Positions 60,201-64,000 of a DNA stretch of 64,000 bases are shown piece by piece (position 1 is the stretch's first letter; every line of letters begins with the position of its first letter). Source of the stretch: Vitrella brassicaformis CCMP3155 (Eukaryota; Protista; Chromerida); contig CDMY01000388.1 in the NCBI GenBank assembly GCA_001179505.1, positions 1 through 64,000 on the forward strand, given 5' to 3'. A program made the position numbers and the translations under genes. Under the pieces are notes generated by a model that was given only the letters and a program-made list of their open reading frames with translations, made no database searches and had not been told where the DNA came from.

Positions 60201-61368
60201 TACACACGTGTTGGGTACGGTACTCTACCTACCATCTGGCAGATGAGCCTCTTGCCATCCTCCACATCCTCGTCCCACGACAGAACTGAACTCACACACC
60301 AAACGAAGGTGACTGACCATCTATCTCAGGCCAGTCGCCTCCTTACCTGTGCCCTGCAGGGTGAGCCGGTGGGCTGACATCATCGACTGCACCTCATACT
60401 CCTTGCGAGCACCCACACGAAGCGGCAGGCGCAGCAACTTGAGCCGGTTAGACGACACGCCCAGAATGAACACATCCTGACCAGACCACATAGATCACTC
60501 ACACACCACAGATGCACTTCTAGACACACATGTGGGTCGCCTTTCACCTCACCGCTTCCTCTTGCTTCACGGCAGCAGGCCGCCGGTCAGCCTCTTCATC
60601 CTCGTCCTGATCACCACTCCCGTCACCAACCTCCTGCTGCTGCTCATCAGCACCACCCGCACCAGCACCATCACCCGCAGCAGCAGCCCCGCTCAGCGCC
60701 CTCGCTGTGTCCTGGTGTGCAACGCCGCTAGCCTGATCTTGGTGCTGCTGCAGTAAAGCAGCGAGGTCCGGGAACGACTTGGCGCGCCGCAGCAGAGGTG
60801 CCGCGTCGCTGTCCTCGAGCGATGGGTGGCCGGCGAAGGAGCGGCTGCGCTTCATCTGGTGCTTCTTGGGTGGGGCGGCGGCCTCTGGTCCCTTCTGGCT
60901 GCCTTGTGTGCTGTGTATGCGGCGGACGGCCTCCCTCACCAAAGCCACCAACACACGCTCCATCACGCTGCCGCTCGTCTCGACCTTGACCGCCACTCCA
61001 TCGAGCTGCTTAGCACCAGGCTCCCCCTCCTCACCGCTGCTGGCCTCCTCAGTGCTGTGTATGCGGCGGACGGCCTCTCTCACGAGCGTCATCAACACAC
61101 GCTCCATCACACTGCCACTCGCCTCGACCTTGGCGGCATCTCCATCGAGCTGTTTAGCACCAGCCGCCCCCTCCTGACCATCGCTGGCCTCCTCCGTGTT
61201 GTGTGTGCCGTGTATGTGACACACCGCCTCTCTCACGAGCACCTCTAACACACGCTCCACGACGCTGCGAGCCGCCTCTCTATCGAGCTGCTTGGCGTCT
61301 GCCGCATCATGCTCTCCGCTGCTTGCCTTCGCTGCTCCACCCTGAGGTCCTATTGGCGGATCGCTCAT
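57210..61368 (-). CDS. Pseudokinase-F-box family, copy B (pseudokinase complete; F-box exon runs into gap)
   Basis: GARKEYEVQSM, GKRLICQM, FGSLARQNFVYQYL, LHSHGLVHEHVKPR|NMMLKYGHGKRVYLVDLKQ, DDLEGLCYSLVWQLSGSLPW and LLRTAID|QLPASEHL via the same phase-2 intron as copy A. Confidence 0.8.
60904..61310 (-). repeat. Three intragenic ~144-bp repeats encoding AKQLD..SV(M/V)ERVLxxLVREAVxxIH
   Basis: gctgtgtatgcggcggacggcctc occurs at 60910 and 61054, with a diverged third unit at ~61208. The translation shows the 48-aa repeat. Confidence 0.9.
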
Positions 61369-61757: not shown

Positions 61758-63993
61758 ATGAGGGTCTTCTTGGTTTGTGTGGTGCTCACCACTGTGACTG
61801 CGGTCTGTCCCGCTGACTCCAGCTGCAGCACCCGCCGTTCACTGCAAAGCACCACCGGCCCTTCAGGCACTGCAGCTCCCCTTGAGAGCATCTGGAATGT
61901 GAGCAGGACGACAAGAACACACGCGACATGCACTGTAATGGTCCTTGTTCATTGCAGGCAACCAAGGCCGTCAAGGACATGATCAAGACCAAAATCACCG
62001 GCCTGAGTCGCCTGGCAGGGCATTCCCACACCCACAGCCACGGCCGCCGCGCTCGGCGGCTGTCGGTCCCACAAACTTTGGCGAACGATGCGGCGCCGGC
62101 CAAGGACGCCCTCGGCCGCATTCGCAACATGACCAAAGCCCTCGTCAATTCCGCCAAGGGCGCGCTGAAGGGGTCATCGGATGGCAGACGTAGGAGGCTG
62201 CAGATCCCGCAGGGCCCAAACCCACTGCTCTCGATACAGAACGAGACGCAGAGTGTCAAGGACATCATCAAGAGCAGGCTGGGAGGATTGGGGCGGAGAA
62301 TGCAGGAGACAGCCTTCTCTGACAAGTATCTGGATTCGCTTAACCTGACAGAGGCCGTTAAGGAGCAGATCAGGAGCAGGGTGCCCTTCACGAGACGTCG
62401 ATTGCAGTTCTCTGACGAGGACTTGGATGTCCTGAACCTGACAGAGGCCGTTAAGGAGCAGATCAGGGGCAAGGCGCCCTTCACGAGACGTCGACAGCTG
62501 CAGAGCAGCAACGCAACCACCACCACTACAGCGACGCCAGCAACCACCGAAGCTCCCGAAGCCACAACGAATGATGGCCCCTGCCAGAGCCCTTGTGAGT
62601 CAGCGCCAACGAATCCACATGCCCGCCGTGTACGTGACTTTGTCGGTGTGTGTGCGTCCATACAGGCACGAGCAAGCAGTGGGGCGATTGTGTCGTCAAG
62701 CCAGCTGACTTCGCGGCGGAGATCGACATGCTGGCTGGTGCTGACCTCCGCGCGATCGCCAACCAGACAGCGTATTGTCGGCACTTCACTTCTCGCGACT
62801 GCCCGGAGAGCACAGGAGACTGCGAATACAACAAAGACGACGAATGTAAGCCGATTCCCGCAGGCATGGGAAAAACACAGACCTGTCTCTCTGTGCGTCG
62901 TCCCTTGTCCTGTTGGCTGTCAGCCCGCGATGCTTCGGACAAGTACCTCGACCCGTTCTGGGGACCGGCCACGTGTCGGCCCACCATAGACTGCGGCATC
63001 CACGGCGACGATGACAAAACCGCGTGTGAGGCCATTTCGGGCTGCAAGTGGCACGGACACGAGGGCAGCGACAGCGGCGAGGGCGACTGCAGGGCAGAGT
63101 GGACAAGCGCTTACGAGGACAAGCTCGTGGGCGAGGCAGCCGTGTGCAAGCAGTTTGTGCCGCTTTTCTACTGCGAGTCGCTGCCAAAGGCCGAGTGCGA
63201 CGCGGACCAAAGTAAGTGAGCCTGCCTGCGGGACATATGTCTCCATGTCTACGTGCATGTGCCATCCAGATTGCGAGTATCGGGCCTGGGGTGAGGATGG
63301 CGAGTGTGCTGTGAAGGACTCGGTTGAGGAAGCCCTGGAGCGAGAGATGGATGACATCAGCGACCTCTCCATGTGCGGCCCTCACGTGCGTTGCCGCCAC
63401 ATCGGCCTCTCGCTCCAGGAGACCTGCGAGGCGGACCTCGCCTGCGGCTGGTATGCCTTCGGCCCCGACGCACCTGGCTTGGGGGTCTGCTTCGCACACC
63501 CGGCGGTGCTCGTTGCCCATCCTGACTTTGTGGACTTGTCGACGGACGCTTGCAAGGCCAAATATGGCTTCCATGCAGTGCCCTGGAACTGCATGTACCA
63601 GAGTGCTATGGCGAATGATGGGGGGAAGACTTGCTATGCTGACGGCGCGTGCACTCTCCTCTGCGAGGAGTGGACCAGTGGGGGCCTCTCGTCGTGCACG
63701 GCCAATGGTAAATGAGTACAACTGATGGATGGATGACCCAATACAGCCTCTCGCTCACTGTCATTGCCGCTCCACCCACAGAGACTTATCTGTACCCCAT
63801 GCTCTTCGGCGAGGAATTCTACAAAGCACGTACGTCACCCATAGGGCACGGAGACATCATGACACGGATACGTCCTTCCTCCCTTCGTTGGCCCTTCCCT
63901 TTATGTGTGCTGCAGTCGACATGGTCGACCGAATGGACGCATGCCAGTCTCAAGTTGACGACCAAGCCACGTCTCCATACGAAGAAGAGGTGA
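61758..63993 (+). CDS. Secreted protein: signal peptide, five Arg-Arg-delimited helical repeats, Thr-rich linker and Cys-rich repeats
   Basis: MRVFLVCVVLTTVTAVCPADSS. Introns at 61899-61957 and 62595-62665, plus later ones, keep the frame. Cys-rich units include CEAISGCKW and CEADLACGW. Confidence 0.8.
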
Positions 63994-64000
63994 CCACCGC

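What the first reader, a model, noticed from the sequence alone, without database searches (positions are those of the whole stretch)
61758..62520. Prohormone-like precursor: five N-glycosylated amphipathic peptides separated by RR sites, three with a G-RR amidation signal
After the signal peptide the sequence is cut into units by RRSLQ, G-RRARRLS, G-RRRRLQ, G-RRMQ, RRRLQ and RRRQLQ. Every unit contains an N-x-T sequon followed by a basic amphipathic helix: WN|ATKAVKDMIKTKI (the sequon is created across the splice junction), RNMTKALVNSAKGAL, QNETQSVKDIIKSRL, LNLTEAVKEQIRSRV and LNLTEAVKEQIRGKA. Dibasic cleavage, Gly-Arg-Arg amidation and N-terminal Gln (pyroglutamate) are established hallmarks of peptide precursors, and RxL/RRL processing sites are known in diatom wall proteins. 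A protist precursor that releases ~27-47-aa peptides plus a Cys-rich body would be a candidate signalling, antimicrobial or wall-assembly system (inference).
Basis: partly seen in the sequence, partly recalled or inferred. Interest (0 to 1): 0.8.

Follow-up and report, generated by a model that had tools for sequence, protein, structure and literature searches.

The report
Secreted algal protein with Arg-x-Leu-punctuated pro-region
The alga Vitrella brassicaformis, a free-living relative of malaria parasites, expresses an orphan secreted cysteine-rich protein whose front part is five sugar-tagged helical repeats, each ending in an Arg-x-Leu motif that looks like the cutting signal of the parasites' plasmepsin V/ASP5 protease rather than a hormone-type dibasic site; cutting itself is untested.

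Summary
Window 61758-62594 holds exons 1-2 of an expressed 14-exon gene of Vitrella brassicaformis. The product is a 1048-aa protein identical to public model P0001. It has a signal peptide, then five degenerate repeats, each with an N-x-T sequon, a short helix and an Arg-rich site. A Thr-rich linker and two ~400-aa orphan Cys-rich modules follow.

The prohormone reading is only partly supported.
- No kexin/furin P-domain or pro-domain was found in the genome.
- No site-1-protease domain was found.
- The only copper monooxygenase carries a DOMON domain, which makes it DBH/MOXD-like rather than PAM.
- Across the three paralogs the shared core is R-x-[L/M] followed by Q/S/H/M, not the dibasic pair (RRSLQ aligns with IRTLQ; RRRQLQ with LRQLQ).
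- An N-terminal Gln requires a cut after Leu/Met.

The genome does encode a clear plasmepsin V/ASP5 orthologue (E = 4e-39 to PDB 4zl4), an STT3 and two glutaminyl cyclases.

My best reading is a pro-region cut at TEXEL/PEXEL-like or diatom-RXL-like sites. Cleavage is inferred, not shown.

Searches of about 5.8 and 1.8 billion proteins found no relatives outside two paralogs in the same genome. The scan has already noted RRL motifs in other secreted proteins of this genome, at least 14 times. Those notes are leads, and I did not test them.

The parts
61758..61898 (+). Exon 1: start codon, signal-peptide-like N-terminus (MRVFLVCVVLTTVTAVC), first site RRSLQ, ends in Asn47 of the split sequon
   Evidence: hydrophobic h-region judged by eye (no SignalP available)
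61833..61847 (+). Site 1, RRSLQ (residues 26-30); paralog 2 has IRTLQ here
61899..61957 (+). Intron 1 (GT..AG, phase 0), between N and AT of the first sequon; position conserved in paralog 2
61958..62594 (+). Exon 2: five degenerate repeats (sequon + helix + Arg-x-Leu/Met site), Thr-rich linker, first Cys of the body
62045..62065 (+). Site 2, RRARRLS (residues 77-83)
62186..62203 (+). Site 3, RRRRLQ (residues 124-129); paralog 2 has RRRMQ, paralog 3 has VRRLM
62294..62305 (+). Site 4, RRMQ (residues 160-163); paralog 2 has VRRLH
62393..62407 (+). Site 5, RRRLQ (residues 193-197)
62486..62503 (+). Site 6, RRRQLQ (residues 224-229), the boundary to the linker; its LQ is invariant in all three paralogs (RRRLQ, LRQLQ)
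62315..62494 (+). 93-bp tandem duplication (1.9 copies, 88% matches) that made units 4 and 5
   Evidence: DNA and RNA contigs break here
62504..62578 (+). Thr/Pro-rich linker (SSNATTTTTATPATTEAPEATTNDG), mucin-like
62666..62845 (+). Exon 3, start of Cys-rich module 1
   Evidence: (joint 62594>62666)
62924..63211 (+). Exon 4, Cys-rich module 1
63270..63707 (+). Exon 5, Cys-rich module 1 (query of the large HMMER search)
63782..63829 (+). Exon 6
63916..64000 (+). Start of exon 7; the gene runs on beyond the window to the stop at C388:65839-65841 (exons 7-14, module 2)

Best explanation
Shown: this is the 5' part of an expressed 14-exon gene of Vitrella brassicaformis. The product is a 1048-aa secreted orphan protein. 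Its parts are a signal peptide, a ~210-aa pro-region predicted to have no fold, a Thr-rich linker, and two ~400-aa Cys-rich modules with no known fold. The pro-region holds five degenerate repeats, each with an N-x-T sequon, a short helix and an Arg-rich site.

Inferred: the sites are Arg-x-Leu/Met motifs (RSL, RRL, RRL, RRM, RRL, RQL) that are cut after Leu/Met in the ER or Golgi. The most likely enzyme is the plasmepsin V/ASP5-type aspartic protease that the genome encodes. In Toxoplasma ASP5 cuts RRL|xx, and in Plasmodium plasmepsin V cuts RxL|xE/Q/D.

Cutting would free the Cys-rich body from its pro-region. It would also chop the pro-region into 32-53-aa glycopeptides, most of them starting with Gln, which the genome's glutaminyl cyclases could turn into pyroGlu.

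My odds: about 0.95 that the architecture and expression are right; about 0.5 that the sites are cut at all; about 0.3-0.35 that the PMV/ASP5 orthologue is the enzyme. I cannot say whether the functional product is the body, the peptides or both.
For: Gene model and expression.

Position of Arg: it sits three residues before the putative cut at all 15 aligned sites of the three paralogs, and four residues before it at only 8 of 15 (read).

Behaviour of the sites across paralogs: Leu and Met swap between paralogs at sites 3 and 4. The dibasic pair is lost while R-x-L is kept at site 1 (IRTLQ) and at the last site of paralog 3 (LRQLQ). The RR of site 3 and the LQ of the last site are invariant in all three paralogs.

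Location of the sites: they lie only in the N-region (RR[LM] 4 against 0 in the body). Most lie between predicted helices in a low-confidence, unfolded model.

Candidate enzyme: a PMV/ASP5 orthologue at C688:~132.6 kb has E=4e-39 to PDB 4zl4/8tyf, against 3e-7 for the next aspartic protease. It has both catalytic motifs (DTGS and DSG) and the FPCxxCxxCGxH insert.

Other candidate enzymes: no kexin/furin P-domain, S8 pro-domain or S1P-specific domain was found.

Literature: ASP5 cuts after RRL at N-terminal, internal and C-terminal positions, and possibly twice in one protein (PMC6212819).
Against: There is no protein-level evidence of any cut.

The two close paralogs are 58-66% identical, so conservation of the sites is weak evidence. 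The helices and sequons are at least as conserved as the sites.

Met at the residue before the cut (RRM) and Ser or Gln at the residue before that are not established ASP5 substrates. Site 4 lies inside a predicted helix.

Plasmepsin V is known to cut one site near the N-terminus, not six in a row. No multi-unit polyprotein is a known ASP5 substrate.

The absence of kexin and S1P domains comes from six-frame, exon-by-exon searches that introns can defeat, and the control for PF16470 rang nowhere. About 70 S8 exon matches show many subtilases of unknown specificity.
Confidence: 0.4

Rival explanations
1. The region is not cut. It is a flexible, basic, N-glycosylated spacer or interaction region in front of the Cys-rich ectodomain (for example wall or polyanion binding, or oligomerisation through its helices). 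The Arg clusters would then serve charge, not cleavage.
For: The helices and sequons are as conserved as the sites. The region is attached to a large folded body. The repeats arose by duplication, which by itself spreads any motif. No cleavage data exist.
Against: The Arg clusters always end in Leu/Met followed by Gln/Ser/His/Met, at the same end of each unit, and that order is kept where the number of Arg changes. The motif is absent from the 819-aa body. Units 4 and 5 are not basic outside the site. The AF2 model shows no packing of the helices.
Confidence: 0.3
2. The region is cut at RRxL/RxL by another endopeptidase. This could be a subtilase with site-1-protease-like specificity, as in plant RALF precursors, or the still unidentified RXL endopeptidase that trims diatom silaffin, cingulin and frustulin precursors.
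For: RRSL, RRRL and RRQL fit RRxL. The plant S1P cuts RALF23 at RRXL (PMC5258720). The units of silaffin Sil1p end in RRIL/RRNL, and an RXL motif follows its signal peptide (PMC4557024), the same grammar as here. The genome has many S8 subtilases.
Against: The S1P-specific domain MBTPS1_3rd was not found. Arg sits four residues before the cut at only 8 of 15 sites, against 15 of 15 three residues before it. The diatom enzyme is unknown, so its presence here cannot be tested.
Confidence: 0.17
3. One reading: kexin/furin-type cleavage after the dibasic pairs, removal of the basic residues by a carboxypeptidase, and Gly-directed amidation at three sites. This would give hormone-like or antimicrobial peptides.
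For: There are RR runs at all six sites and G-RR at three. G-RR is kept at two of these three sites in paralog 2. One Cu2_monooxygen gene exists. Glutaminyl cyclases exist.
Against: No P-domain or S8 pro-domain was found. The monooxygenase carries a DOMON domain, the DBH/MOXD architecture, and it is the only such locus. The dibasic pair is not kept at site 1 of paralog 2 or in paralog 3. A cut after RR leaves Leu, Met or Ser-Leu in front of Gln, so there would be no N-terminal Gln. The helices are only modestly amphipathic, and two of the five units are acidic outside their Arg tails.
Confidence: 0.08

Closest known systems
TEXEL/PEXEL substrates of Toxoplasma ASP5 and Plasmodium plasmepsin V
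   Same: Both have a signal peptide followed by RRL / RxL motifs. The first motif lies about 10 residues after the likely signal-peptide cut. The organism is the closest free-living relative of apicomplexans and has a clear PMV/ASP5 orthologue. ASP5 cuts RRL at any position in a protein and possibly twice in one protein (PMC6212819).
   Different: This protein has six sites in tandem at repeat boundaries. Met precedes the putative cut at one site. There is no host cell to export into. The protein has no homology to any GRA or PEXEL protein, and cleavage is untested.
Diatom silaffin precursor Sil1p and other RXL-processed frustule proteins
   Same: Both have a signal peptide, an RXL motif just after it, and then tandem basic repeat units that each end in RR-x-L, which is removed on maturation (PMC4557024). 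Both belong to the SAR supergroup (my own knowledge).
   Different: The units here are helical N-x-T glycopeptide-like segments, not Lys/Ser-rich silica-precipitating peptides. A large Cys-rich body follows them. Vitrella makes no silica (my own knowledge). There is no sequence homology.
Plant RALF and related propeptides cut by site-1 protease (SBT6.1) at RRXL
   Same: A secreted precursor with a dibasic-plus-Leu site in front of a Cys-containing product (PMC5258720).
   Different: Plant precursors have one site, not six. No S1P-specific domain was found in this genome. Arg three residues before the cut fits better here than Arg four residues before it.
Kexin/PC-processed multi-copy prohormones (yeast prepro-alpha-factor, animal neuropeptide precursors)
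   Same: A signal peptide, an N-glycosylated pro-region, tandem units separated by basic sites, and Gly before the basic residues at some sites.
   Different: No kexin/furin hallmark domains and no PAM-type enzyme were found. The conserved core of the sites includes the Leu/Met. An 800-aa folded body is attached.

Membership tests
Kexin/PC-type peptide-hormone precursor | Dibasic (KR/RR) sites flanking each unit | tested here: met
   There are RR runs at all six sites, but the pair is lost at site 1 in paralog 2 (IRTLQ) and in paralog 3 (LRQLQ).
Kexin/PC-type peptide-hormone precursor | A subtilisin/kexin convertase (S8 domain plus P-domain) in the same genome | tested here: not met
   PF01483 gave 0 matches and PF16470 gave 0 matches (its control rang nowhere). 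S8 domains are plentiful. The search is six-frame and exon by exon, so absence is not proven.
Kexin/PC-type peptide-hormone precursor | Amidation machinery (PHM + PAL) for Gly-extended peptides | tested here: not met
   The only Cu2_monooxygen locus (C193) is DOMON + Cu2_monooxygen + Cu2_monoox_C, which is DBH/MOXD-like. PAL was not searched.
Kexin/PC-type peptide-hormone precursor | Detected mature peptides | not testable with these tools
   This needs peptidomics.
TEXEL/PEXEL-type substrate of a plasmepsin V/ASP5 protease | Entry into the ER through a signal peptide | tested here: inconclusive
   MRVFLVCVVLTTVTAVC has the n/h/c look of a signal peptide, and both paralogs have one too. No signal-peptide predictor was available.
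TEXEL/PEXEL-type substrate of a plasmepsin V/ASP5 protease | RRL (TEXEL) or RxL (PEXEL) motif | tested here: met
   There are 3 RRL, 1 RRM, RSL and RQL. Arg sits three residues before the putative cut at 15 of 15 aligned sites in the three paralogs.
TEXEL/PEXEL-type substrate of a plasmepsin V/ASP5 protease | The protease is present in the same organism | tested here: met
   The C688:~132.6 kb ORF has E=4e-39 to plasmepsin V structures, against 3e-7 for the next family. It has DTGS and DSG motifs. Its clade assignment was not checked on a tree.
TEXEL/PEXEL-type substrate of a plasmepsin V/ASP5 protease | Cleavage after Leu that depends on the protease | not testable with these tools
   This needs N-terminomics, an enzyme assay or an inhibitor.
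Diatom RXL-processed polyprotein (silaffin Sil1p type) | RXL after the signal peptide and RR-x-L at the end of each repeat unit | tested here: met
   RRSL lies 26-29 residues from the start, and the units end in RRL, RRL, RRM, RRL and RQL. The comparison rests on PMC4557024.
Diatom RXL-processed polyprotein (silaffin Sil1p type) | Lys/Ser-rich units that precipitate silica; sequence kinship | tested here: not met
   The units are helical and N-x-T-bearing, and two are acidic outside their Arg tails. No homologue was found outside this genome.
SRCR domain protein (automatic UniRef name of P0001) | Match to the SRCR profile | tested here: not met
   Pfam gave no family at E<=10 for P0001, P0002, P0003 or P0009, apart from one chance-level toxin row. 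No fold match was found.

The most novel reading that the evidence does not exclude
In the free-living ancestor of apicomplexans, the plasmepsin V/ASP5 protease served as a general pro-protein and polyprotein convertase for secreted proteins. This gene would be a natural multi-site substrate that releases pyroGlu-capped N-glycopeptides (signal, wall-assembly or antimicrobial) together with a mature Cys-rich wall or surface protein. The parasites' PEXEL/TEXEL export signal would then descend from an algal pro-peptide processing code, shared in spirit with the diatom RXL and oomycete RxLR motifs.
Probability: 0.2. Interest if true: 0.8.

Novelty: new variant of a known kind. Interest (0 to 1): 0.5.

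Why it matters
Where the PEXEL/TEXEL cleavage signal comes from, and what plasmepsin V/ASP5 did before parasitism, are open questions. A free-living chromerid with a clear PMV/ASP5 orthologue and secreted proteins punctuated by conserved R-x-L sites gives testable natural substrates. This gene offers six sites in one protein and a paralog for comparison.

If the sites are cut, it would link three motif systems in the SAR supergroup that are usually treated apart: apicomplexan PEXEL/TEXEL, diatom RXL and, from my own knowledge, oomycete RxLR. It would also add a new type of polyprotein.

If they are not cut, the gene is simply a lineage-specific Cys-rich glycoprotein with a basic repeat spacer.

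This instance adds less than it would alone, because the scan has already noted RRL motifs in many other secreted proteins of this genome.

Tried and rejected
- Pfam on every exon and on P0001, P0002, P0003 and P0009 gave nothing above noise. The weak rows were PSI, MCM3_WHD and Dehydrin.
- The large HMMER search with exon 5 returned only self and two paralogs. P0004-P0008 are Cys-poor bacterial repeat proteins with no RR[LM], and I rejected them as spurious.
- Word searches of the N-region, both as part of P0001 and as a 212-aa stand-alone query, found only self and P0009.
- The ESM Atlas search by features gave a best score of 0.75, which is chance level.
- For the Cys-rich module, Foldseek against the PDB found no match at E<=0.001. 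The ESM Atlas search by shape gave TM<=0.31. VIA wide gave a best Z of 3.5. All were rejected.
- The weak own-genome hit at C405:176546 (E=0.235) is an unrelated protein without a signal peptide.
- The look-up of encoding contigs for P0001 has no record.
- The 'cationic amphipathic antimicrobial helix' idea fails because the hydrophobic moment is not above shuffles and two of the five units are acidic outside their Arg tails.
- I considered a genome-sample test of RRL enrichment after signal peptides. I dropped it as underpowered without the proteome.
Whole-protein steps used P0001 as returned by the library search; it is identical to my 14-exon model. The joined step of my own model was left out.
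Full report
**Where and what.** The window is contig C388:1-64000 of a 72.7-Mb, 1064-contig genome. Two protein searches name the organism as Vitrella brassicaformis CCMP3155. The flagged stretch is the 5' end of a plus-strand gene. Exon 1 (61758-61898) translates to MRVFLVCVVLTTVTAVCPADSSCSTRRSLQSTTGPSGTAAPLESIWN.

**Gene model.** I built a 14-exon GT..AG model with frame continuity, ending at a stop at C388:65839. The large library search then returned a public 1048-aa protein, P0001, that is letter for letter this model. Logan contigs of run X4 are spliced exactly at introns 2, 3 and 4 and at introns 9-13. One contig piece starts at the first base of exon 2 with 206 further letters unplaced, about the size of exon 1 plus a 5' UTR. 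So the gene is transcribed and spliced as read. Whole-protein steps used P0001 as the tool returned it, and the joined step of my own model was left out.

**Architecture.**
- Residues 1 to about 20 look like a signal peptide. This is judged by eye, as no predictor was available.
- Residues ~21-229 form an Arg- and Leu-rich region (12% R, 0.5% C).
- Residues 230-254 are a Thr/Pro-rich linker.
- Residues 256-656 and 656-1048 are two copies of a ~400-aa Cys-rich module (7.4% Cys; alignment A3).

**The body is an orphan.**
- Pfam finds nothing on the exons or on the whole proteins. The automatic UniRef name 'SRCR domain-containing protein' is therefore not supported.
- A HMMER scan of 1.84 billion representatives with exon 5 finds only the protein itself and two paralogs. 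Five further rows are Cys-poor bacterial repeat proteins, which I regard as spurious.
- An AF2 model of the module (pLDDT 69.6, pTM 0.60) has no match in the PDB by Foldseek, in the ESM Atlas (TM<=0.31) or by VIA-align (best Z 3.5).

**The family.** The genome holds three members: the window gene and two tandem genes on C688.
- Paralog 2 has the same N-region with four units instead of five, and the same phase-0 intron inside the first N|AT sequon. Its public annotation is split into P0009 and P0002.
- Paralog 3 (P0003) has a shorter, sequon-free N-region. Its annotated start misses the signal peptide.
- Word searches of 5.8 billion proteins with the N-region find only self and P0009.

**The repeats.** Cutting at the Arg-rich sites gives units of 53, 46, 34, 34 and 32 residues. 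Each has N-x-T followed by x-[AS]-[VL]-[KV]-x-x-[IA]-[KR]. Units 4 and 5 come from a 93-bp tandem duplication. Motif counts far exceed composition-matched shuffles, and the sites are confined to the N-region. AF2 gives no fold for the N-region (mean pLDDT 42.9). It shows isolated helices with most sites in the gaps between them, although site 4 lies inside a predicted helix. The helices are only modestly amphipathic (hydrophobic moment 0.57-0.58, not above shuffles). Units 4 and 5 are acidic outside their Arg tail. The 'basic amphipathic peptide' picture therefore holds at best for units 1-3.

**What the sites really are.** Aligning the paralogs is the most informative step.
- Site 1 is RRSLQ against IRTLQ.
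- Site 3 is RRRRLQ against RRRMQ, and VRRLM in paralog 3.
- Site 4 is GRRMQ against VRRLH.
- The last site is RRRQLQ, RRRLQ and LRQLQ in the three paralogs.

What is always kept is an Arg, then any residue, then Leu or Met, followed mostly by Gln, Ser or His. Arg sits three residues before the putative cut at 15 of 15 sites and four residues before it at only 8 of 15. The dibasic pair and the preceding Gly are not always kept. Between the two close paralogs, identity is 0.70 at sites, 0.83 at sequons, 0.76 in helices and 0.44 in spacers. Conserved units and sites with free spacers is the pattern of processed precursors. With only two sequences at 58-66% identity this is weak evidence, and it fits a functional uncut region as well.

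**Enzymes in the genome.**

| Enzyme class | Search | Result |
|---|---|---|
| Kexin/furin | P_proprotein domain, S8 pro-domain | No match; the control for the second rang nowhere |
| Site-1 protease | MBTPS1_3rd domain | No match |
| S8 subtilases | Peptidase_S8 | About 70 exon matches, specificity unknown |
| Copper monooxygenase | Cu2_monooxygen | One locus (C193) with DOMON + N + C domains, the DBH/MOXD architecture, not PAM |
| Glutaminyl cyclase | Plant-type family | Two loci |
| Oligosaccharyltransferase | STT3 | Present |
| Aspartic proteases | Asp | At least 10 loci |

One aspartic protease locus, C688:~132.6 kb on the minus strand, matches plasmepsin V structures at E=4e-39, while the next family scores 3e-7. 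It has the DTGS and DSG motifs and the Cys-rich FPCxxCxxCGxH insert. All absences come from six-frame, exon-by-exon searches and are not proof.

**Comparison with known systems.**
- Toxoplasma ASP5 cuts after RRL (TEXEL, RRLxx) in the Golgi, at N-terminal, internal and C-terminal positions, and probably twice in GRA44. Plasmepsin V cuts RxL|xE/Q/D (PMC6212819).
- PMV and ASP5 form clade D of the apicomplexan aspartic proteases. Vitrella and Chromera sequences were included in that tree (PMC8540915).
- Diatom silaffin Sil1p has an RXL motif after its signal peptide and seven basic units ending in RRIL/RRNL that are removed. An RXL endopeptidase is postulated but not identified (PMC4557024).
- Plant S1P cuts RALF23 at RRXL (PMC5258720).
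- The grammar here is closest to Sil1p, and the available enzyme is closest to PMV/ASP5. I found no paper that treats PEXEL-like processing in chromerids. The chromerid genome paper mentions PEXEL only for Plasmodium.

**Verdict.** The prohormone/amidation reading is partly supported in layout but not in enzymology. The best-supported mechanism is a pro-region cut at R-x-L/M sites, most plausibly by the PMV/ASP5 orthologue, releasing a Cys-rich body and Gln-started glycopeptides (overall confidence 0.4). The rivals are no cleavage (0.3), another RXL/RRxL endopeptidase (0.17) and kexin plus amidation (0.08).

**Earlier notes.** Earlier notes of this scan report RRL motifs in many other secreted proteins of this genome, and a PMV-type protease. 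I reached the R-x-L/PMV reading before reading them and did not test them, so they are leads and not support. They do mean this gene is one more instance of a theme the scan has already found on other DNA.

Noticed in passing
window 60544-61368 (minus strand): A 274-aa ORF just upstream, divergent from the gene. It contains a 144-bp tandem repeat (60908-61208, 2.1 copies, 85% matches) that encodes repeated ...AKQLDG.AVKVE.SGSVMERVL..LVREAVRRIHST... units.
   Followed up: no
L004:5238-6500 (C388:66238-67500), minus strand: A convergent neighbour gene with seven CT..AC (minus-strand GT..AG) introns. Its transcript contig is fused with the 3' end of the studied gene in run X4 (contig depth 1019 against 39 for the studied gene's 5' contig), so the 3' ends overlap or abut.
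   Followed up: partly
L004:3467-3527 (C388:64467-64527), intron 8: Contigs of runs X1 and X4 branch here, with 255-letter loose ends on both sides. This may be an allelic indel or a dispersed repeat inside the intron.
   Followed up: no
L005 (C688:280863-285800) and L013/L005 (C688:276970-280624): Public annotation of the two paralogs looks faulty. Paralog 2 is split into P0009 (298 aa, N-region) and P0002 (622 aa). Paralog 3 (P0003) starts at MIKRL, although an upstream in-frame MMARLDLCFFSLVSLVALS signal-peptide-like start exists. Only paralog 3 ends in a hydrophobic tail (LAALHLGIAVLFLSVFVVA), which may be a GPI signal or a membrane anchor.
   Followed up: partly
L023 (C688:131100-134591), minus strand: A plasmepsin V/ASP5-type aspartic protease gene (E=4e-39 to PDB 4zl4). 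It lies on the same contig as the two paralogs, about 145 kb away.
   Followed up: partly
L014 (C193:115335-118763): The genome's only detected copper type II monooxygenase. It has DOMON + Cu2_monooxygen + Cu2_monoox_C and a hydrophobic C-terminus, so it is DBH/MOXD-like rather than PAM.
   Followed up: partly
P0001 (whole protein): The UniRef automatic name 'SRCR domain-containing protein' is not backed by Pfam or by fold searches. The ~400-aa Cys-rich module, present twice per protein, has no detectable relative outside this genome.
   Followed up: yes
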